A stretch of DNA of 63,461 nucleotides, counting the filler, from Platydemus manokwari (taxonomy: Eukaryota), in NCBI GenBank assembly GCA_037951405.1. It is 5 parts of 5 records of this genome, joined end to end, with 100 filler letters (N's around TTAATTAATTAA, not from the genome) between each part and the next. Parts side by side here need not be neighbours in the genome. Positions count along the whole stretch, not along the records: positions 41,896 to 52,318 come from JBBMOY011134773.1; 4 more parts are not named here. The stretch is one strand, 5' to 3'. Below are positions 41,896 to 52,318 of the stretch, piece by piece (the stretch's first letter is position 1; the number at the start of each line of letters is the position of its first letter). The notes under the pieces are model-generated. The model was not told the DNA's origin. It ran no database searches and saw nothing but the letters and a program-made list of their open reading frames with translations. The position numbers were made by a program, and so were the translations under genes.

Positions 41896-44598
41896 TTAAT
41901 TAGCGCCGGTAAATCAGCATTTAATATGATTGTGAAATTTATTACCATTTTTAAATGGAAATTTGGTTTTGATAGGTTGAAATGACTTATACCACTTTCA
42001 TAATCAAGGACTCATATCAATTATAAAAATGTAATCTTAATATCGGATATCAGTTTGCAAGTCAAAAATACCTCAGCAAAATAAAACCGCTGGATTCTTA
42101 AAAGACAATTGCTACTTGGACATATTAATTTACAGAATATTTACAGGAAATATGGACAAAAATCCACTAGGTCGGTCACGATTTTAAAAAATATATCATT
42201 AATTATAACATCGATATGCGACGACCTACTGATGACTTTCTTCTTTGATCAATGGGATCCAGAATAAAATTAGAAAAACATTTTATCATGTACATATTGA
42301 GTTGAAAAATCAAAAATAAATAATTAAATTAAAAATAAATATTTTGCAAATTGCCAATAAGGACAATAAATCTCCAAAATCAATAAATTCATTGGGCATT
42401 TGTTAGAGATTTTCATACATTTAAATACGAAATTGAATCAAAAAACATTCCAAAAACAAGCACCAGGCGTGAATAAATATCCAATCGTTTCCACTTATTT
42501 TTGGCGGAAATATAAAATAGCAATTTATGGGGAAGCACATTATCAATTATATAAGAAAAGAAAATTTTTCCATATTTTGTAGAAAATCAAGATTTCTCGT
42601 CTCAATCTCTAATAATAAAAACAAACAATTATATGCCCGACTGTCATGAATTTTAAATATAACAGCAGGACAACACAAATGGATATCAATTATTGATAAA
42701 TTATTATTTTTGTTTAAATGATATGATTTTGTCTCTCCAAAACGTTTTCACGACATTCATTCTCTCATCTCACATATGGTTAGAACATTTAATAATTAAT
42801 CAAAACTTGCATTGATATTGTGAACCGCTTTTTTTCTCAGAAATGTATTGGGCGAACTACTTTTGGATTTTGTTGGCATAATGAAATTGATTGCTTTCGG
42901 TCTGTTGGTTTTGGATAATTTTCGATAATCATGTTGCTTATTCTCTCTAAAATTATTCATGAAAAATAACTCGAAACCAATTGTCATTTATTCAACTTTG
43001 CCAACCGAAAATCACAAAGCAGTTCCGTTACATCGTGAAGTTGTCGGGTTTGAGGTTGAATATTAGAGACAAGTTGATAAGCCAATTGATTTTTATCCGT
43101 TGTGATTTCAGATAAATTGTATTTTTGCCTGATAACTTCGATCTGTGTCAATTTAAATTTGAAAAATAAATGAATGATTAATTCCAAATGTTTTCATATA
43201 TATATATATCGGGATTATTTTCCAATTCGTTATAACAATAGCAAAAAGATTTTCTACGTGATATTATGGAGAAGGAAACGATCGTGATTATAGCTTTGAC
43301 TGGCGATTATTTCAACAATCTGTCCACCAATAAACACATTTCAACTTTTCATATTAGAATAGGGCCTCAAATCGATTAATTTTATATCTATAACAGAGTT
43401 ATTTCATTCAACCTCTGGTAACTAGACAATAAGATGATACATATTTTGGTTAATAATGACCATATTCTCATGGATAAAAATCCAAATCTCAGCCATGAAA
43501 CCTATTATTATTCAAGGTATTATTCAAAGCTTAATTCTGCTCTAAATCTTTTGAATAAATGATAAGATGGCAAGATGAAATGAAAATATATGAAATAAAC
43601 AGTATGCTCTTGTTGATGATTTCGATGTGAATTACTTATATCATCAATAACTTAATGATAAAAGGTAGAATGTTTTCAGGAAAATATCGAGCTAATGATT
43701 AACTTGCTCAAGCTTGCGATGCTTTCAAGCTTCAATATCAATTAATGGTTCCAATTATATATTTGAATATCAATATGTTTCAAAGAAAATTGTTCTTATT
43801 AATATTCATTAAGGAGAGTTTGTATTTAACGATAAGAAAGACATTATTTGCACTTAATAAACAAATTGTGAGTTTGATATGTATTTGAATCCAGTGTCAT
43901 TCCTTAATATATTTTATACATAATTATTTATAGATATATTTTATATATAGCAAAATAAACCTAATACAATACAACTCTTGCTTTTTAATGATTTTTCTAA
44001 AGAATAAATCTAGCCATATATTCGGCCTATAATTCATCATGTATATTTTTCCATGCTTATAACCGGCAAAAATCCAATACTTTAAAATTTTAGGGTATTA
44101 AATGAAAAATAATAAATAATTATATTAATTTTAACAAGACAAACTTAGCGGTGATACGAAAATCTTTAAATGATATTGTAAATGGAAACAGAAGCAATAC
44201 ATCAGATCTTATATTATTCAAAGTAGTTCTTCAATAATTTTGGGAAAGATTTATTGATACACATTTATACATACACACACATATATATAATAAAACATTA
44301 TACACCCCATATCTTATCATTCTAGTGATAACAGAGGACAAATTTTACTATGTATGTGTGTGTTTGTATTTTATGGTTTTCTAAATTTCTGAAAACTTGA
44401 TTCATTTACAGTTCCATATCAGTTCCTTTAAATTCTATCATTTATATCATGTTTTTATTAGATTTAAAACCCACTCATAGCTCATCCTCGTGACAATGAA
44501 TCGAAAACAAGATATGATAAGTTGTTTTTAACAAAATCATATCAATAACACGATATTTTGGAAACTGATTCCAAATGAAATACAAATTCATCTTTGTC

Positions 44599-44641
<43 letters not shown>

Positions 44642-45302
44642 CATCGATCATACTTTCATCGAAGACAGTCTTATTCGAATCTTATAACAACTTATTTTAC
44701 TAAATGATGGACAAGTATAGAGAACGCTTGAAAAGGATGATTTCCATCGATGAACGCAGGAAAAATAGTAAAAAGTCAAAGTTAATATAACTTCTAGATG
44801 AGAGGGAGAATCTATCTAATCTTTTAAAGTAGAAAATAGTATCAAAAGAATACACAAAATCTCAGGAGATACGCGTTCCCAGTAGTGGCAGTTTACTGAA
44901 TTTATTATATATTGGTCTAGAGCTTCTCGGTCGCTGTTGGAGTAAAATCACTTATCAAACCCTACTTATAACTCTGATGATTGAAAATAGTTCAACTATT
45001 TCCGTTCGACAGAGACCACAACAATGTTCAAGCTTTAACTGTAGGAATATGAAAATATTTCATCAGTGTGCCTTTTTATATCAATAAATAATAGTAAAAT
45101 AATTCAACTGAATAAAATTGGCCAAATCTATCAATAAAAAGCTGATTAGGGATCATAGTTATCAATTAATGCATCAAATTATTGATTACTATTACAATTT
45201 GTATAGTTTAAAGGTTCCTTACGAATTTTTATCCTAAATTATAAAAATGTATACCTTATAACAATGATCATCTTAATTATCTCATTGGCGTTATCTCTAA
45301 TT

Positions 45303-46055
45303 TTACTGAATTGAACTTATTATCATTGAAATTATAGTGTGACAAAAAGAATAAATCCATATCTTAATAATGGTTAAATAATAAAAATCAACCTCATTTT
45401 TTTCTAATTGGTTAATACAATTATCAAGGCGTATATCAAAATTGAAAAATTTCTCCAAATCACTCTCATTTGACATGACTGATCGAACGACTTGCATGAA
45501 AAAGTTTACCATCGACAAATAAAAGCTATCGATCCATAAACGAGTGAAATATATAGCAAATATTTTATGTTCAGATGGTATTTTAAGAAATGGAAATTCT
45601 AAAATGAATTTCAATAGACATTCGCCAATAGAAAATTCTCACCAAACCAATCAATCCATTCCGTTTTATTGTTCAACATGTAAGAACCCATTGACTGGAA
45701 AAATAAGTTTATTTTATCATTTTTTTTGTTTTTAAAACATTCTACTAAAAATGCTTTAAACATATCTGATTTCATTGAATCAGCAGTTCTTTGTTTGTCA
45801 AAATCCAAAAACTTAAAATAAAGTATTTCATAATCCTTCCAAATTTTTATTAAAGAATCAAGATCATTAGACTGTATAGCTACTTGAATTAAATCAACGA
45901 AATAACGAGACTAAAGTAAAGCAATAAGATTTAAGTTTGCAAAAAAAGACCTTCTTTTTCGGTCGATCCACTCTTTCTTCTTCGGTGAAAGCATTTAAAG
46001 TTAATTTATAATCTTTTATAGTCAAAATCTGTTTAATATAACTTTTTTCATTCAT
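45303..46055 (-). CDS. WDR91 N-terminal-domain-like protein; 3' end uncertain
   Basis: Exons 46055-45951, 45910-45643, 45598-45303 (possible donor near 45392). ..NDLDSLIKIWKDYE..KNDKINLFFQ..TEWIDWFEFPFLKIPSEHKIFAIYFTRLWIDSFYLSMVNF aligns by eye to WDR91 [50 protein letters not shown]. Confidence 0.75.
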
Positions 46056-46741
46056 TTTCTGATTATTTTAAAAATCAAACAACCAATAACATATATTTAA
46101 ACAAAATGTACATAAAATAAAATTCTATAAAGTATTGCAAAGATAATGTCATTTTTAATTTTCTGCCTTTCCTAAATAAAATTTAAATTAGTAACTATAT
46201 ACACATTTAAACTTAAAATCAAGCAAATAATTCAGTTAAAGTGATAATTATCAAAGAAATATCATGAAGTAATTCATATATTCCTCAAATGGCACCTGCT
46301 TCATCACGATAAATCATATACATCTTTAAAAATTATATATTCAAATTATACACTAATTTTTTAATAGCTAATGCAATTCATAGGTAAAGTGAAAACTACA
46401 AAATTAACTTTAAAACCTAAATAATGTACGTAACTTGTGAAAAAATTTTCTGTTAAATTCAGAACTAACGATATCCATTGATATTTTCATTTACTCCTTA
46501 AATTGGTTGTAATTTAGAGGAGAATATTAAGTAAAATTGTTCTAAATTTAAAAATTTAAAGGAATTGTGAAAAATAAAATTAACCAACTTTAAAACAGGC
46601 ACAACCATAAAAAACTGTTTCATATTTTTATCGGATTATCAGTTTATTTCCAGTTTCAGACAAACGAAAATATCTCTACCACATTAATACCCTAAAATCC
46701 TTGAAACTAAAAGAATTTTAATTAGCGTTCAAATAAAATTT

Positions 46742-49700
46742 TTATTTTACTTGATCATTGATCTTGGTTAAATATTGCCATAATATTTCCCCACACTTAT
46801 TATTGTATGCCAATTCTGATGGTTGACATAAGCATCCATTATTAAAATATGTTCCGGAAAATTTTTTTATTGATGATGAAATGCAGCACAACAGTGGCGT
46901 TGAAGCAGCCTGGCTCTAAATCAAAGTTGGAATTTACAAACAACAATTGGTGTTTGAATACAAACTTAAATCTAAAAATGTTTATTTTTCAATAGATAAG
47001 CTCAAATAAAAAAATTATAAATTGCATAATGGAAGCAATTTTGTTTTGGAGCAAAACTCAACATAAGATGAATATTTATATTAATGGATAACTGAAAAGT
47101 TTTAAAGTTTGGAGGTTAAAACCATTTATTTCTATAGGCCGATAAAATGACGTCATAACTACACTAAAGTTTCAAGTACTTAAAAGCTTCATCTCTAAAC
47201 TATTTATTACGGTAGGAATATATTAATATTAACTGATGAGAAATTAACTGAATTTATTTAAGAGTATAATAAAGTTTAATGAAAAAATAAATTCAAACTA
47301 AAAATAAAGAACGATAGATGGTAAAAATATAAATATAATAATTATAAATAAAATTAATGAAAAGAGCATTCAAAAACTCCAATACATTGGTATTTAATCA
47401 TTGCAGAATACCAAAACTACTTTGCGCAGTAAATCGTGCAAAATTCCAATCTTTGGGATGCTATCTTACATGCAAAATGCCAACTAAATTCATCAAATAA
47501 GATTGTATTTAAAATTCATCAATTATTGACCATATAATGACCGATAGAATAATGCCTGATGATATAGCCAGAAAAGAGAATAAAAGAACTATTACAAATT
47601 CATAAATCACAAATTAATAGACCTTTAAATGCTAGATTTAATTTATAATTATAAACATATGATGCTTAGAATTTGTGAATTTTCGTGCCAACAAATCAAA
47701 GCACTCAAATAAAATTGTTATTTACTTCAAAATATATGTGGAAACTTGTGTAGACAAGTTATCCATATCTGTCGAGATATCCATTCACCAAACATTTCAT
47801 TTCTAGTAGATTCGATACCATAATCATTATTTAAGGCACGACATCTTTAACCTTAAAATCAGTAACATAATCAATAGCGAATTAATTTTCCATCGTTGTA
47901 ATATCGATCTATTATTGTATCTACATTTAATCGCTGTTGTTATCATTTGTTTTCAGTCTTATTGATTTACACAAATAAATTACAATTTGAAAAGAATCAA
48001 ATTATTGGTGGCGACATCCCAGTAATCTAATTCAATATTGGATGAAATAGAACTCGTGACCAATAACACAAGCAAAACCCCATCAAAATCTAAGATATTT
48101 TCATAACTAGGAACGGTTTTGACATCTTTAACCTTAAAATCAGTAACGCAATCAATAACGAATCATTTTCTATTATTGTATTATCGATCTATTATTGTAT
48201 CTACATTTAATCGCTGTTGTTATCATTTGTTTCCAGTCTTATTGATTTACACAGACAACTTATAATTTGAAAAGAATCAAATTATTGGTGACGACATGCA
48301 CGTAATCTAATCCAATATTACATGAAATAGAACTCGTGACCAATAATTAGGAACGGTTTTGACATTAATTATAAGCAGTGGAATAATTATTGTCAATCTA
48401 TTTCTCGCTGTTTCTGGTAAATATATTTCTTATAAATTACATGAGATCATTTTTCCAATCCATCTAGCCGAAACATGTTTAAATCATTTCTGATAGGAAT
48501 ATTAAAACTGATCAAAAAGTGTAATTTAAATATCTGATATTCGTAAGTGATGAATAGATTATCGATTATGGTGATATTAACCGAATTAGTCTCGGATTTT
48601 TTTTTATTATTATAAATGAAAAATGATTTGTAAGCAAATGCGATATTATTCAATACATAACCAAATAGATATAAATCAACCAATCAATTTACATCTTACC
48701 AAAGTTTTAGTAAATGGACTGAACAACCAAAACATTAGTCTGATAAACGAATGATATCTCGCAATATTCGTTCCATGAACAACATTTCCAGGATGACAAG
48801 CAAAAAACAATGGCCTACTATTACAATGGCGCAAATCCCATCGTTTTTTCGATTGGTTCACTAGAATAATTTTACACAAACTTGTCAACGAATAAACATG
48901 GAATCCATTGTAATCCATTAATGACGGTTGTAAATCGGTGGGTTTGAAATCTTTAACAGCTCTAAACAGCGTCTCATTTAATTGATAAATCATTGATAAT
49001 CAATCAACAACCTATGACTCTCACAAGTCAACCAAACCACTCTACATTCACACTGGGACAGAGCAAATGTCGACAAAAGAGTTTCTTGAATATAAAACTG
49101 AGATAAAACATTTATCTGAACCGATGATTCAAATCCATCACGTGTGATAACGAATGGAGGACACATAATCGCAGCACTAAAGACAATCATATTGGCATCA
49201 CTTGTTTTATTCAATACTAACTAGACAAACAAAACTTAATCAATAATTATTAAAACAAAACTTCAACATTGCAAAACATTTTGACCGATTGAAAACTGGT
49301 GAGGTCTAAATGAAAAATTGTTACAAAATCAATAAAGTATTCATGGCCTATTTTCATAATCAAATCAGAACTGCATTTTTTAATATCAGGACAACCCAAA
49401 ATAATCAGACAATTTTTCGATATTAGCTGGTGAACGATTTCCAAACCTATTCCAGAACAACCACCAATCACAATTGCCAATTTTGAAGATAGATTTGAAC
49501 CAATTATTACCTGATATAATGATAACATATTAATCATCGTGGTACTTCATTGATTAACATAAAATACATTTGTAAATATTATTTGTAAACTTACTATTTT
49601 CAATCTGCTTCCAATAATAAGTAATAAATAGATTATTATAATATATTTTTATCTTTATTAAGTGAAATTTAAAAAATTTTATTTTCTAAATTTTGGTTAA

Positions 49701-50018
49701 ATGAACTATTGTAATGAATTTACTTGCTCAGAAGTTGAAAATGAATCATATTTTTGAATAAATTTCTCCGATTTTTGTCTGGAACGATTGAAAGCACAGG
49801 ATTTATTATATTTGGTGTATTTTAACGAATCGTCATTATCAATGCTTAGTAATTTCATCGGTGAAATCATCTGTGTTGTATTGTTAATATGACTAATAAA
49901 ATTAAATAAATAGTTAATAAATTATCCTCAGTTACTTAATGTAAGTAGTCTGATCATTATTTAGACATTTTTCCCACCCTGGGGGCAATTCGCATTCAGA
50001 ATCAGTATCACTATCCAT
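46742..50018 (-). CDS. wwox: WWOX-like WW domain-containing oxidoreductase, about 381 aa, 6 exons
   Basis: Exons 50018-49936, 49892-49724, 49510-49262, 49220-49012, 48961-48700, 46915-46742, phase-consistent (1146 nt). Motifs DTDSECELPPGWE, GGCSGIG, LDLTSFQSVKMF, CESHR, HPGN, FSPFTKTLSQAASTPLLC, GTYFNN. Confidence 0.9.
47840..48365. repeat. Tandem duplication (about 225-bp core, period 281 bp) in the last WWOX intron
   Basis: GACATCTTTAACCTTAAAATCAGTAAC...GAAATAGAACTCGTGACCAATAA at 47840-48066 and 48121-48346. Confidence 0.9.
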
Positions 50019-50171
50019 TTAAATTTCAGATTCTTTAAACTTTAAAATATCGTAAAATTCAGTGATGAAAAACTTCAAACAATAACGCATTTATAATTTT
50101 AAAAAGCAAAATTTAAATAAATAATAACTGCGAAAAAACTATATTTGAATAAAAGGCATTTATTGAGCTCA

Positions 50172-51292
50172 TTAAAACATTTTACACAAATTTACATTAA
50201 TAACAGCATCTTGATATAACAGTTCAACCATTTCTGCCAGAATATTTTTGCTTTGTTTATTATTATCGGGAAACTGCTTATGTACATTTCTAATTAACAT
50301 TCTAGTATTATATAATTGCTCGCGTAACATTTGTAAATTTTCGGATAAATTATTCGTGATACACAGTTGGTTATTATATTGAAATATTTTACTTTCTACT
50401 TTCTCAGGGGAAATTTTTTGAGTAATCTATCAATAATATAAATCGTTATAAAAACATTAATTAATTTTACAAACCGTATAAATGTTTTCACATATATTAT
50501 AGAATTCACACCAATGAATAGCCCAATTTTCAGCTATTTTTTCATCACCTACGATTTGATCTTCAATATCATTTGTTCTCAATGATACAGCTGCTTTACA
50601 ACATTTACTAAATAATGAACCACTTGATAAATAAATATATTTCCTATATTGGTCATCGTTAATGTCATTCACTTTAAAGAAAATAGATTCAATGCTATCT
50701 CCGATACCGTTGGATATAAGATCGACAATCTGAAATAAATTATTACTTAAACATTAATTAACCAAGTATTACATTTGTATTCTGAAAATCAGCTAAAGCC
50801 TTAGAAACAGACGCCAAGAGATAATCTCCGCACAATGTAGCCATTTTATTACCAAATTGCATATCACAACTCCAATCACTTATTTTAGCTTTTGAATTAT
50901 TTTCAATATTAACCAAATCCCTTGTTAAAAAATAATAAAATATTGAATGTCAAAATAAAATTTTACCTGTGAATACGTAATGCTGCGTGAGCAGTTTCCA
51001 CAATCTCGGCCAAACTTCGCTGGTTAGCGTTAATACTGGAATATTGATTATTAAAACTTTTGGAAACTAGCAGAACTAAAAGACCACGAAGTTGAGATAC
51101 CCCATGCTTATCACCTATTAATGTTTTCGCAGTTTTTAATAAAGGATGCTGTGTGCCTACTAATTTTCTAACTTGAGATGCAACAAATGCCATCTCATCA
51201 CTAATTAAATAACGGATATTGATGAGAGAAGATGGGTAACAAACCACTTTTTCGGAACGACTAATTAATTTTTGCCAAGGTGTCTTCCACAT
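50172..51292 (-). CDS. pdss2: Decaprenyl-diphosphate synthase subunit 2 (PDSS2/DLP1), 4 exons
   Basis: Exons 51292-50967, 50920-50773, 50729-50475, 50426-50172. SEKVVCYPSS..LISDEM..QVRKLVGTQHPLLKTA..QLRGLLVLLVSK, QRSLAEIVE, MQFGNKMATLCGDYLLA; lacks DDxxD, as expected for subunit 2. AATAAA follows at about 50159-50164. Confidence 0.9.
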
Positions 51293-51501
51293 TAAAATAA
51301 TTGACTGCGTATTAAATCGTAATTAACTTCGACTTTTTTATTTTGAGAGTTTGTATTTCGTTTGGTAATATCAGAATCAGGTGTATTAGGTAAATATTCC
51401 GTTTTTATGTCAATATTTTCGAATTCTATTATGTCTGTTACCCAATCTTTATCGATGATGTCAATTAAATAACCAGGGAAAGTATAAGAAGCATCAGACA
51501 T
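51292..51501 (-). CDS. anapc13: Anaphase-promoting complex subunit 13-like, 69 aa
   Basis: GYLIDIIDKDWVTDIIEFENIDIKTEYLP aligns by eye with APC13 GRILDLIDDAWREDKLPYEDVAIPLNELP; size matches. A 5'UTR intron (51547-51502) ends right at the ATG. Confidence 0.75.
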   Translation of the reverse strand: MSDASYTFPGYLIDIIDKDWVTDIIEFENIDIKTEYLPNTPDSDITKRNTNSQNKKVEVNYDLIRSQLF

Positions 51502-52318
51502 CTAAATGTTAAATTAATTTTTTTTTAATCAACAACTAAAAACATACTTAAATTATGAAAGATAAGTATTTGTCTTATCAAATATATAAACAAAGAAATT
51601 TACCATATTAAATAATAAAATTTTAAAAATACAAATAATTATAAATAGCTATTTAAATTTTTTTATCTCATTTAGTTTTTAACATTAATTATAAATATGT
51701 CGTTTTCATTATAATATAAACTAATGAAAAAATATCTACAATTGCATCATTTTGACAAAAAACATTATTTGACCTTCTCTAAATTACCGTGTCTACGGTT
51801 TCGACCTCTCAAAACTTTATCAATTTTCTTATTAAATTTAATTTTATCTTTTGCATTTGTTTATGCATGTTTGTCATCTTCTAAAAACAGTATCCGCCTT
51901 ATACATTTGCATTGCTTCTACGATAGAACTCATTATGTTAGGAAAAAGCTTATCACCTTATTTTATTAAAGCGTCTAGTTATTTCAATATTAAATTATGA
52001 TTTTCATTTTTGGTTATTTGCAGTTACCAAAAGTTGTTTCTGTAAAATTGAATTTATGTTTTACTCAGTTTCATATTTGAGAAATTCTAATAATTCTTTC
52101 AGTTCTGAGTACTAATAAAGAAATTATTATACTTCTTGAGCTCGTACATAAATTCAATTTCAGATGAAAATTTGTTAGGAATAATTATCATGTTTTGTAG
52201 AACTGCTTAATATGTTTGAGCCAACACGTTAATTTAAGTAATATCAAATATAATTCTTGTATAATATAGTAGTATATTTGCTGGGTTATTGTTGTTCAAA
52301 GGCTGTTAATAAGCTCAA

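What the first reader, a model, noticed from the sequence alone, without database searches (positions are those of the whole stretch)
50963..51606. APC13 stop codon overlaps the PDSS2 start codon (TAATG): candidate bicistronic, translationally coupled animal locus
Seen: minus-strand 51294-51290 reads TAATG; the last A of the APC13-like TAA is the A of the PDSS2 ATG. The PDSS2 frame is closed 11 codons upstream, leaving no separate 5'UTR or long mitochondrial presequence. A cryptic acceptor (tacgcag|, exon start 51304) lies inside the APC13 ORF 12 nt before the ATG. Joining an AUG-ending flatworm spliced leader, or the upstream ATG|gtaaat donor (51606-51604), to it would give in-frame MSIILMWKTPW. 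Established: stop-start overlaps drive termination-reinitiation in viruses and coupling in bacteria, and are rare in animal nuclear genes. Inference: one transcription unit linking a cell-cycle E3 subunit and ubiquinone synthesis, resolved by reinitiation, alternative 3' splicing or trans-splicing.
Basis: partly seen in the sequence, partly recalled or inferred. Interest (0 to 1): 0.8.

Follow-up and report, generated by a model that had tools for sequence, protein, structure and literature searches.

The report
Conserved flatworm APC13–PDSS2 two-gene unit
A tiny cell-cycle gene (APC13) and a ubiquinone-synthesis gene (PDSS2) sit end to start on one strand in this AT-rich flatworm-like genome and in tapeworms and a monogenean, and the near-absence of AUGs in the first gene suggests both proteins come from one mRNA by leaky scanning.

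Summary
On the minus strand, a 69-codon APC13-like ORF (51501-51292) ends in TAA, and its last A starts the ATG of a four-exon, 327-aa PDSS2-like gene. A second assembly of the reads shows no indel.

The same gene pair occurs in a deeply diverged relative, in Protopolystoma, and in the tapeworms Spirometra, Mesocestoides and Hymenolepis. The stop-to-start distance ranges from -32 to +15 nt, so close apposition is conserved but the exact overlap is not.

Three features favour a true bicistronic mRNA read by leaky scanning:
- In every lineage with an intact PDSS2, the APC13 cistron holds almost no AUGs: 5 observed against 19.8 expected over five lineages, P about 8e-5.
- The APC13 AUG has a weak context.
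- Relatives whose PDSS2 has decayed, or which lack a downstream PDSS2, show no AUG depletion.

An intron-free contig from a tapeworm-like relative carries both ORFs. No RNA data exist for this genome, so trans-splicing at the cag| site 12 nt upstream, or reinitiation, remain possible.

This is a new example of a known kind, of moderate interest.

The parts
51292..51501 (-). APC13-like ORF: 69 codons plus TAA. It has no internal Met and a single out-of-frame ATG at +7.
   Evidence: (the profile hits a named Protopolystoma APC13 and a canonical Apc13p protein). dN/dS is 0.04 against L001.
51290..51294 (-). TAATG, where the APC13 stop shares one base with the PDSS2 start.
   Evidence: L001 is identical here. 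A re-assembly shows no indel.
51502..51506 (-). tttag| acceptor-like site directly abutting the APC13 ATG. It may be a trans-splice acceptor or a cis acceptor for a 5' exon.
   Evidence: AG lies directly before the ATG in the window, L001, L002, L004, L005 and L006. Its use is inferred.
51305..51311 (-). tacgcag| candidate acceptor inside the last APC13 codons, 12 nt before the PDSS2 ATG.
   Evidence: It is conserved in L001 and reads ..gcaa / ..tcaa in L002 and L004, where PDSS2 has decayed. In the window-L001 comparison, 11 of the last 12 synonymous codons of APC13 are identical against 55% overall. This is a weak signal.
50967..51292 (-). PDSS2-like exon 1: 108 full codons plus 2 nt. The protein starts at the conserved core and has no long presequence.
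   Evidence: (aligns to residues 2-89 of solanesyl-diphosphate synthases).
50773..50920 (-). PDSS2-like exon 2, containing the motif DMQFGNKMATLCGDYLLA.
50475..50729 (-). PDSS2-like exon 3.
50172..50426 (-). PDSS2-like exon 4, with the stop TAA at 50174-50172.
50159..50164 (-). AATAAA 8 nt after the PDSS2 stop. This is the likely poly(A) signal of the unit.
   Evidence: conserved in L001. Its function is inferred.
49936..50018 (-). First exon (WW domain) of a WWOX-like gene, starting 153 nt after the PDSS2 stop on the same strand.
   Evidence: The SDR exons match Pfam adh_short. The same gene follows the PDSS2 remnant in L002.
51602..51606 (-). It is probably a chance match.
   Evidence: It is present in the window, but no ATG|GT occurs upstream of APC13 in L002 or L004.

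Best explanation
APC13 and PDSS2 form an old two-gene unit in flatworms, most likely transcribed from one promoter as a single RNA. The small APC13 ORF comes first, and the PDSS2 start lies within -32 to +15 nt of the APC13 stop.

The most likely way PDSS2 is made is leaky scanning on a mature bicistronic mRNA. Some 40S subunits skip the weak-context APC13 AUG and scan through an APC13 cistron that selection keeps almost free of AUGs. They then initiate at the next AUG, which is the PDSS2 start. In the window this happens to give the TAATG overlap.

What is shown and what is inferred:
- Shown: the gene identities, conserved adjacency, purifying selection, AUG depletion and weak start context.
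- Partly shown: a spliced RNA-like contig in a relative that carries both ORFs.
- Inferred: co-transcription in this species, and leaky scanning itself.
For: Identity of the two genes:
- A profile of the window clade hits the UniRef-named APC13 of Protopolystoma (E 2e-7) and a canonical Apc13p protein.
- The upstream ORFs of Hymenolepis diminuta and Protopolystoma pass the Pfam Apc13p cut-off.
- A family profile hits human APC13 at E 7e-13.
- The PDSS2-like protein matches polyprenyl synthases but lacks both DDxxD motifs. The Hymenolepis-like orthologue falls in the 'decaprenyl diphosphate synthase subunit 2 / DLP1' clusters.

Conserved adjacency, given as stop-to-ATG distance:

| Locus | Distance (nt) |
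|---|---|
| window | -1 |
| L001 | -1 |
| Protopolystoma | +1 |
| Mesocestoides | +6 |
| L008 | +13 |
| Spirometra | +15 |
| Hymenolepis diminuta | -32 |
| L006 | -32 |

A non-flatworm APC13 locus has no PDSS2 neighbour.

AUG depletion:
- The seven tabulated loci hold 1, 1, 1, 2, 1, 0 and 1 ATGs between the two starts, and Mesocestoides holds none by direct reading, against 3-5 expected per locus.
- Over five lineages, 5 are observed against 19.8 expected (Poisson P 8e-5).
- A codon-permutation null gives P of 0.002 to 0.22 per locus.
- Most control coding stretches (PDSS2, WWOX) sit near expectation; the Spirometra PDSS2 exon 1 has 2 ATGs against 4.2 expected.
- APC13 is not depleted where PDSS2 has decayed (L002 has 3, L004 has 6) or is absent (L013 has 7).

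Start context: the APC13 AUG has a pyrimidine at -3 in 6 of 8 loci and T at +4 in all 8.

RNA-level hint: L008 lacks the introns that the window, Protopolystoma, Spirometra and Hymenolepis share, yet carries both ORFs. It therefore looks like a spliced RNA.

Precedent: green-algal bicistronic loci, where leaky scanning was proven by mutation, show the same signature. They have a weak ORF1 Kozak sequence, few AUGs before ORF2 and short inter-ORF spacers, and some have stop/start overlaps (PMC11291117).
Against: - No RNA data exist for this genome, so neither co-transcription nor a bicistronic mature mRNA is shown here.
- L008 could be an assembly merge of overlapping transcripts, and its sample type could not be checked.
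- The lineages share ancestry, so the AUG counts are not fully independent. Each locus alone is only marginally significant.
- One conserved out-of-frame AUG at +7 opens a 9-10 codon ORF, and L008 has two internal AUGs. Both would capture some scanning ribosomes.
- The PDSS2 AUG context in the window is also weak.
- Flatworms are known to resolve polycistrons by SL trans-splicing (PMC12582326), and a conserved cag| sits 12 nt upstream of the PDSS2 ATG.
Confidence: 0.5

Rival explanations
1. This is an operon resolved by splicing. The primary transcript covers both genes. A spliced leader, or a shared 5' exon, is joined either to the tttag| site in front of APC13 or to the tacgcag| site at 51304 inside the last APC13 codons. 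The second choice gives a monocistronic PDSS2 mRNA at the cost of APC13 on that molecule.
For: - Flatworms trans-splice and have operons (PMC12582326).
- AG directly precedes the APC13 ATG in six loci.
- The cag| site is conserved between the window and L001 despite saturated dS, and is lost in L002 and L004, where PDSS2 has decayed.
- Synonymous codons are unusually conserved over the last 12 APC13 codons.
- An AUG-ending leader joined at 51304 would be in frame and open.
Against: - This model does not explain why the whole 200-300 nt APC13 cistron is AUG-poor in every lineage with an intact PDSS2.
- Hymenolepis has no AG within 47-58 nt of the PDSS2 ATG, and Protopolystoma has none within about 70 nt.
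- All 45 Schistosoma mansoni operon pairs analysed in the literature have at least 5 bp between the poly(A) site and the acceptor, with a median of 99 bp. Here there is no room for a 3' UTR.
- The acceptor loss in L002 and L004 is probably a single event.
- The run of conserved synonymous codons is not significant genome-wide.
Confidence: 0.25
2. This is termination-reinitiation. Ribosomes translate APC13, terminate at UAA, and a fraction restart at the overlapping or nearby AUG of PDSS2, as at the UAAUG of caliciviruses, hypovirus CHV1 or the SART1 retrotransposon.
For: - The stop and start lie within -32 to +15 nt in all eight loci.
- The window and L001 have UAAUG, and UAAUG restart sites are documented (PMC10275272).
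- Protopolystoma carries an N-terminal extension of about 9 residues that keeps its AUG beside the stop.
Against: - ORF1 is 69-102 codons long. Reinitiation after ORFs of that length normally needs a dedicated upstream element, and none was found. Folding z-scores at the junction run from -0.45 to +0.95, and no UGGGA motif occurs in the 90 nt upstream (direct reading).
- This model does not predict AUG depletion or a weak ORF1 context.
- A 32-nt backward move in Hymenolepis would be inefficient.
Confidence: 0.12
3. These are two independent genes that merely abut. PDSS2 has its own transcription start inside or just upstream of the APC13 ORF, and APC13 mRNAs end inside PDSS2.
For: Compact genomes do hold overlapping transcription units. 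AT-rich sequence offers many promoter-like and poly(A)-like sites, for example ATTAAA within PDSS2 exon 1 (direct reading).
Against: - Abutment is conserved across a monogenean, four tapeworm lineages and the window clade while the flanking genes differ.
- AUG depletion extends back to the APC13 start.
- L008 carries both ORFs on one intron-free sequence.
Confidence: 0.08

Closest known systems
Bicistronic nuclear loci of green algae (Chlamydomonas, Auxenochlorella), translated by leaky scanning (PMC11291117)
   Same: ORF1 is short, and the inter-ORF spacer is very short or overlapping. ORF1 has a weak start context, and AUGs are under-represented before ORF2. The pairing is conserved across species.
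   Different: This locus is in an animal, a flatworm, that also has SL trans-splicing. Here the mature bicistronic mRNA and the effect of mutations are not shown. The signature rests on one gene pair in several lineages, not on a genome-wide set.
Flatworm polycistrons resolved by SL trans-splicing (Schistosoma, Echinococcus, Hymenolepis; PMC12582326)
   Same: The genes lie on the same strand with far less than 300 bp between them. The taxon is known to trans-splice. Acceptor-like AGs precede both ATGs in the window clade.
   Different: There is no intercistronic space at all (-32 to +15 nt between the ORFs), so any acceptor and any 3'-end signal would lie inside coding sequence. The analysed S. 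mansoni pairs have at least 5 bp between poly(A) site and acceptor, with a median of 99 bp. That paper finds operon composition poorly conserved among parasitic flatworms, whereas this pair is conserved.
UAAUG / AUGA termination-reinitiation (caliciviruses, influenza B, hypovirus CHV1, SART1 retrotransposon; PMC10275272, PMC2699510)
   Same: The window and L001 have the identical UAAUG pentanucleotide joining two out-of-frame ORFs.
   Different: The overlap is not conserved in the other lineages. No upstream structured or 18S-complementary element was found. AUG depletion of ORF1 is not a feature of that mechanism.
SL1-type operons of C. elegans and operons of Ciona (as summarised in PMC12582326)
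   Same: There is no intercistronic sequence. Processing of the upstream 3' end and the downstream 5' end would compete on one molecule.
   Different: In those operons the poly(A) site abuts the acceptor after a normal 3' UTR. Here the acceptor would lie upstream of the first gene's stop codon.
Mammalian MOCS2 (MOCS2A/MOCS2B overlapping ORFs on one mRNA). This comparison comes from my own knowledge and was not checked here.
   Same: It is an animal nuclear gene with a small first ORF overlapping the start of a second ORF, thought to be read by leaky scanning.
   Different: The two MOCS2 products are subunits of one enzyme. APC13 and PDSS2 have no known functional link.

Membership tests
APC13 (Pfam PF05839 Apc13p) | Match to the Apc13p profile at or above the curated cut-off of 22 bits | tested here: inconclusive
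   The window ORF scores 16.5 bits (E 0.0095), below the cut-off. The syntenic orthologues of H. diminuta (22.8) and Protopolystoma (22.2) pass, and Spirometra scores 21.8.
APC13 (Pfam PF05839 Apc13p) | A small protein (about 60-100 aa) whose N-terminal G-x-L/I-x-D-x-V/I-D-x-x-W ... LP motif aligns with human APC13 | tested here: met
   Residues 7-45 align with human APC13 residues 6-43. The window-clade profile finds the UniRef-named APC13 of Protopolystoma (E 2e-7) and a canonical Apc13p protein. The family profile hits 4ui9_M at E 7e-13. That profile includes one canonical sequence, so the last result is partly circular.
APC13 (Pfam PF05839 Apc13p) | Being a subunit of the anaphase-promoting complex | not testable with these tools
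   This needs biochemistry.
PDSS2 / DLP1 (non-catalytic subunit of long-chain trans-prenyl diphosphate synthase) | Homology to the polyprenyl synthase fold | tested here: met
   Individual exons score below the Pfam polyprenyl_synt cut-off (13.8 and 14.1 bits). Exon 1 matches solanesyl-diphosphate synthases at E 5e-5 over chain residues 2-89. Atlas neighbours belong to polyprenyl_synt. Exons 1-3 align along the length of tapeworm PDSS2 proteins, which carry PF00348; exon 4 aligns only at its C-terminal part.
PDSS2 / DLP1 (non-catalytic subunit of long-chain trans-prenyl diphosphate synthase) | Both Asp-rich DDxxD motifs missing, together with the PDSS2 signature around DMxFGNK..L.GD.LLA | tested here: met
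   The 327-aa translation has IHRDLVN where catalytic enzymes have IHDD, and it has no DDxxD anywhere (read). The Hymenolepis-like orthologue falls in the 'Decaprenyl diphosphate synthase subunit 2' and 'DLP1' clusters at scores of 0.93 and 0.90.
PDSS2 / DLP1 (non-catalytic subunit of long-chain trans-prenyl diphosphate synthase) | A heterotetramer with PDSS1 in mitochondria | not testable with these tools
   No PDSS1 gene lies in the piece, and targeting was not predicted.
SL-resolved flatworm operon | [quoted passage not shown] | tested here: met
   The distance is -1 nt in the window and -32 to +15 nt in relatives.
SL-resolved flatworm operon | Spliced-leader reads at an acceptor upstream of the downstream gene | not testable with these tools
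   No RNA run holds the locus. Only a candidate cag| site at 51305-51307 exists.
SL-resolved flatworm operon | Space for the upstream 3' UTR and poly(A) site before the acceptor (at least 5 bp in all analysed S. mansoni pairs) | tested here: not met
   The ORFs abut or overlap, so any acceptor lies inside the APC13 coding sequence.
Termination-reinitiation of the UAAUG / TURBS type | Stop and restart codons that overlap or lie within a few nt of each other | tested here: met
   The window and L001 have TAATG, and other lineages range from -32 to +15 nt.
Termination-reinitiation of the UAAUG / TURBS type | An upstream structured or 18S-complementary element that tethers the ribosome after a long ORF | tested here: not met
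   Six 100-nt windows around the junction, in the window and in L001, fold no better than shuffles (z from -0.45 to +0.95). No UGGGA occurs in the 90 nt upstream. Absence of a known motif does not exclude an unknown one.
Leaky-scanning bicistronic locus | A weak initiation context at ORF1 | tested here: met
   There is a pyrimidine at -3 in 6 of 8 loci and T at +4 in all 8. If a leader is spliced at AG|ATG, the context would change. That possibility is untested.
Leaky-scanning bicistronic locus | Under-representation of AUGs between the ORF1 and ORF2 starts | tested here: met
   Loci hold 0-2 ATGs against 3-5 expected. Over five lineages, 5 are observed against 19.8 expected (P 8e-5). Most control coding stretches sit near expectation (the Spirometra PDSS2 exon 1 has 2 against 4.2). 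Depletion is absent where PDSS2 has decayed or is not adjacent.
Leaky-scanning bicistronic locus | A mature mRNA that carries both ORFs | tested here: inconclusive
   L008 and L012 lack the conserved introns, and L008 holds both ORFs. The sample type is unverified, and an assembly merge is possible. There is no evidence for the window species.

The most novel reading that the evidence does not exclude
This would be an obligately bicistronic animal nuclear mRNA, conserved since before the split of monogeneans, tapeworms and the AT-rich window clade. A cell-cycle E3 subunit and the regulatory subunit of the coenzyme-Q side-chain synthase would be made in a fixed ratio from one capped message by leaky scanning. 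There would be no spliced-leader resolution, even though the host phylum has that machinery. Selection would be visible in APC13 as avoidance of methionine and of out-of-frame AUGs, relaxed once PDSS2 dies.
Probability: 0.4. Interest if true: 0.65.

Novelty: new member of a known kind. Interest (0 to 1): 0.5.

Why it matters
Truly bicistronic nuclear mRNAs are rare in animals, and few are conserved over long spans. This pair offers three things:

- **A natural test.** Leaky scanning, reinitiation and trans-splicing can be compared in a phylum that has all the needed machinery.
- **A marker of translational constraint.** A protein's methionine content and out-of-frame AUGs appear to be shaped by the gene that lies downstream of it.
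- **An annotation lesson.** The APC13 ORF is not annotated in the Hymenolepis diminuta and Mesocestoides corti assemblies, although it sits directly in front of an annotated gene.

It would also explain why flatworm PDSS2 starts right at the conserved core, without the long presequence seen elsewhere. That last comparison comes from my own knowledge of human PDSS2 and was not checked here.

Tried and rejected
- **RNA evidence.** The only run holding the stretch is a DNA run, kept as contigs. Laying it on the window could only confirm the sequence.
- **More relatives.** Two metagenome scans returned nothing new: PDSS2 exon 1 found nothing and APC13 re-found L003. The last word-based protein search, with a PDSS2 alignment, returned only known hits. 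Trematodes, planarians and macrostomids could therefore not be checked.
- **False positive.** P0005, from the profile search, is a 1061-aa repeat protein and was discarded.
- **RNA structure.** No structure stands out at the junction, and the piece has no Rfam family.
It is not conserved and was treated as chance.
- **Frameshift or readthrough fusion.** This was rejected. The heptamer before the stop is not a slippery site of the form X XXY YYZ, and the PDSS2 frame is closed 11 codons upstream.
- **Synonymous-site conservation near the junction.** The run of 11 of 12 identical codons is suggestive but not significant across the whole alignment.
- **Literature.** No paper in the library links ANAPC13 with PDSS2 in flatworms, or links decaprenyl synthase with spliced leaders. 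The supplements of PMC12582326 mention neither gene.
- **Species identity.** The window's species was not determined. The evidence for a flatworm is that the nearest named APC13 is monogenean and that the derived synteny is shared with tapeworms.
Full report
**1. Observation**

On the minus strand, a 69-codon ORF (51501..51292) ends with TAA at 51294-51292. The next ORF starts with ATG at 51292-51290, so the strand reads TAATG.

The downstream frame is closed by a TAA 11 codons upstream. tacgcag| ends at 51305, 12 nt before the ATG. ATG|gtaaat lies at 51606-51604.

An independent Logan assembly of the only run that holds the stretch (X1, DNA, depth about 13) matches 49900-51900 with no differences and no indels. 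It may derive from the same reads as the window.

**2. What the genes are**

*The upstream ORF is an APC13 homologue.*
- It scores below the Pfam Apc13p cut-off (16.5 against 22 bits). It aligns to human APC13 position for position, residues 7-45 against 6-43.
- A profile of the window ORF and its two close relatives was searched against 1.8 billion representative proteins. It found only small proteins of the same type. These include the UniRef-named APC13 of the monogenean Protopolystoma xenopodis (E 2e-7) and a canonical Apc13p protein.
- The syntenic ORFs of Hymenolepis diminuta and Protopolystoma pass the Pfam cut-off.
- A family profile hits human APC13 at E 7e-13.

*The downstream gene is a PDSS2/DLP1-type subunit.*
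- It has four exons: 51292-50967, 50920-50773, 50729-50475 and 50426-50172. Introns are 43-48 nt, and the protein is 327 aa.
- It is a polyprenyl-synthase homologue that lacks both DDxxD motifs and carries the DMQFGNK..L.GD.LLA signature.
- The Hymenolepis-like orthologue falls in the 'decaprenyl diphosphate synthase subunit 2 / DLP1' clusters.

Both genes are under strong purifying selection against L001, a relative with saturated synonymous sites. dN/dS is 0.04 for APC13 and 0.06 for PDSS2.

**3. Relatives**

The pair is conserved, but the overlap is not.

| Locus | Source | Stop-to-ATG distance (nt) | Note |
|---|---|---|---|
| window | this piece | -1 (TAATG) | |
| L001 | Logan contig | -1 (TAATG) | introns at the same places |
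| L007 | Protopolystoma xenopodis | +1 (TAAAATG) | |
| L015 | Mesocestoides corti | +6 | APC13 unannotated |
| L008 | tapeworm-like JGI contig | +13 | no introns |
| L011 | Spirometra sp. Aus1 | +15 | an 89-aa gene is annotated upstream |
| L010 | Hymenolepis diminuta | -32 | APC13 unannotated |
| L006 | Hymenolepis-like Logan contig | -32 | |

These loci were read.

A canonical APC13 on a 356-kb contig of another animal has no PDSS2 neighbour. The nearest PDSS2 relatives of L008 are tapeworm proteins. Together with the APC13 result, this places the window among flatworms, but its species is unknown. The piece has 27% GC.

In two environmental relatives (L002/L003 and L004), APC13 is followed by a decayed PDSS2 remnant with stops and frameshifts.

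**4. Mechanism**

APC13 cannot be made from an mRNA that ends before PDSS2 begins, because there is no room for a 3' UTR. Some APC13-coding RNA must therefore run into PDSS2. Several observations bear on how PDSS2 is then translated.

*The APC13 cistron is almost free of AUGs wherever PDSS2 is intact.*
- The seven tabulated loci hold 1, 1, 1, 2, 1, 0 and 1 ATGs between the two starts, and Mesocestoides holds none by direct reading, against 3-5 expected.
- Over five lineages treated as independent, 5 are observed against 19.8 expected (Poisson P 8e-5).
- A codon-order permutation null gives P of 0.002 to 0.22 per locus.
- Most of the PDSS2 and WWOX coding stretches used as controls sit near expectation; the Spirometra PDSS2 exon 1 is low (2 against 4.2).
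- APC13 is not depleted in L002 (3), L004 (6) or the non-flatworm locus (7), and it gains internal methionines there.

*The APC13 AUG has a weak context.* There is a pyrimidine at -3 in 6 of 8 loci and T at +4 in all 8.

*L008 carries both ORFs but lacks introns.* The missing introns are those whose positions are shared by the window, Protopolystoma, Spirometra and Hymenolepis. It therefore looks like a spliced RNA holding both cistrons. An assembly merge cannot be excluded.

This is the signature reported for green-algal bicistronic loci, where leaky scanning was proven by mutation (PMC11291117). Neither reinitiation nor trans-splicing near the PDSS2 ATG predicts AUG avoidance across the whole first cistron.

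**5. Rivals**

*Splicing-based resolution stays open.* AG abuts the APC13 ATG in six loci. The cag| site at 51305-51307 is conserved in L001 and lost in the two loci with a decayed PDSS2. The last 12 same-residue codons of APC13 are identical in 11 cases, against 55% overall, which is weak evidence. Against this model, Hymenolepis and Protopolystoma have no AG within about 47-70 nt of the PDSS2 ATG. Known S. mansoni operons keep at least 5 bp, with a median of 99 bp, between poly(A) site and acceptor.

*Termination-reinitiation fits the close spacing but little else.* It lacks any detectable upstream element. It would follow a 69-102 codon ORF, which normally needs such an element.

*An internal promoter is the least likely.* The conservation of the pair and the extent of the AUG-poor stretch both argue against it.

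**6. Comparison and novelty**

The kinds are known. These are eukaryotic bicistronic genes read by leaky scanning, flatworm polycistrons, and UAAUG restart sites. This pair was not found in the paper library.

I file it as a new member of a known kind. The point of interest is the conserved, AUG-depleted first cistron in an animal phylum that could have used trans-splicing instead. The TAATG overlap itself looks like one local outcome of compaction rather than the functional element.

**7. Limits**

- There is no RNA evidence for this genome.
- The number of independent lineages is small.
- The sample type of L008 could not be verified.

Noticed in passing
window 48676-50018 (-): A WWOX-like gene follows on the same strand. 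It has a WW-domain first exon (MDSDTDSECELPPGWEK...) and then short-chain dehydrogenase exons (Pfam adh_short, 26.6 bits). It starts 153 nt after the PDSS2 stop, with AATAAA at 50164-50159 in between. The same gene follows the PDSS2 remnant in L002. In tapeworms the downstream neighbour is instead a nicotinic-receptor-type channel gene.
   Followed up: partly
L002 286-800, L004 527-700: In two environmental relatives from the same sample, the PDSS2 downstream of APC13 is a decayed remnant with stops, frameshifts and truncation. Their APC13 has gained 2 and 4 internal methionines. Whether these organisms keep another PDSS2 copy is unknown.
   Followed up: partly
L010 2724-3032; L015 2225-2494: The APC13 ORF is not annotated in the Hymenolepis diminuta (GCA_902177915.1, GCA_900618445.1) and Mesocestoides corti (GCA_900604375.1) assemblies, although it lies directly in front of the annotated PDSS2 gene.
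   Followed up: yes
L005 349-585: An APC13 homologue has an in-frame TAG at the conserved Leu of EYLPNT. The source's gene caller read it as Q. It may be a pseudogene, a sequencing error or an alternative code.
   Followed up: no
window 50019-50090 (-): An upstream ORF of 23 codons lies in the putative WWOX leader. Its TAA stop is immediately followed by the WWOX ATG (TAAATG). L002 does not obviously conserve it.
   Followed up: no
window 45306-45614 (-): A 103-aa ORF gives a weak, sub-threshold match to the Armc9 CTLH-like domain (20.4 bits, cut-off 27). This may be part of another minus-strand gene. The rest of 41896-48400 was not analysed.
   Followed up: no
L008 1466-1538; L012 829-902: The intron-free tapeworm-like contigs both run on past the PDSS2 stop into a tttttttcag| acceptor-like site with no AATAAA. 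This hints at a further downstream cistron or an unprocessed 3' end.
   Followed up: no
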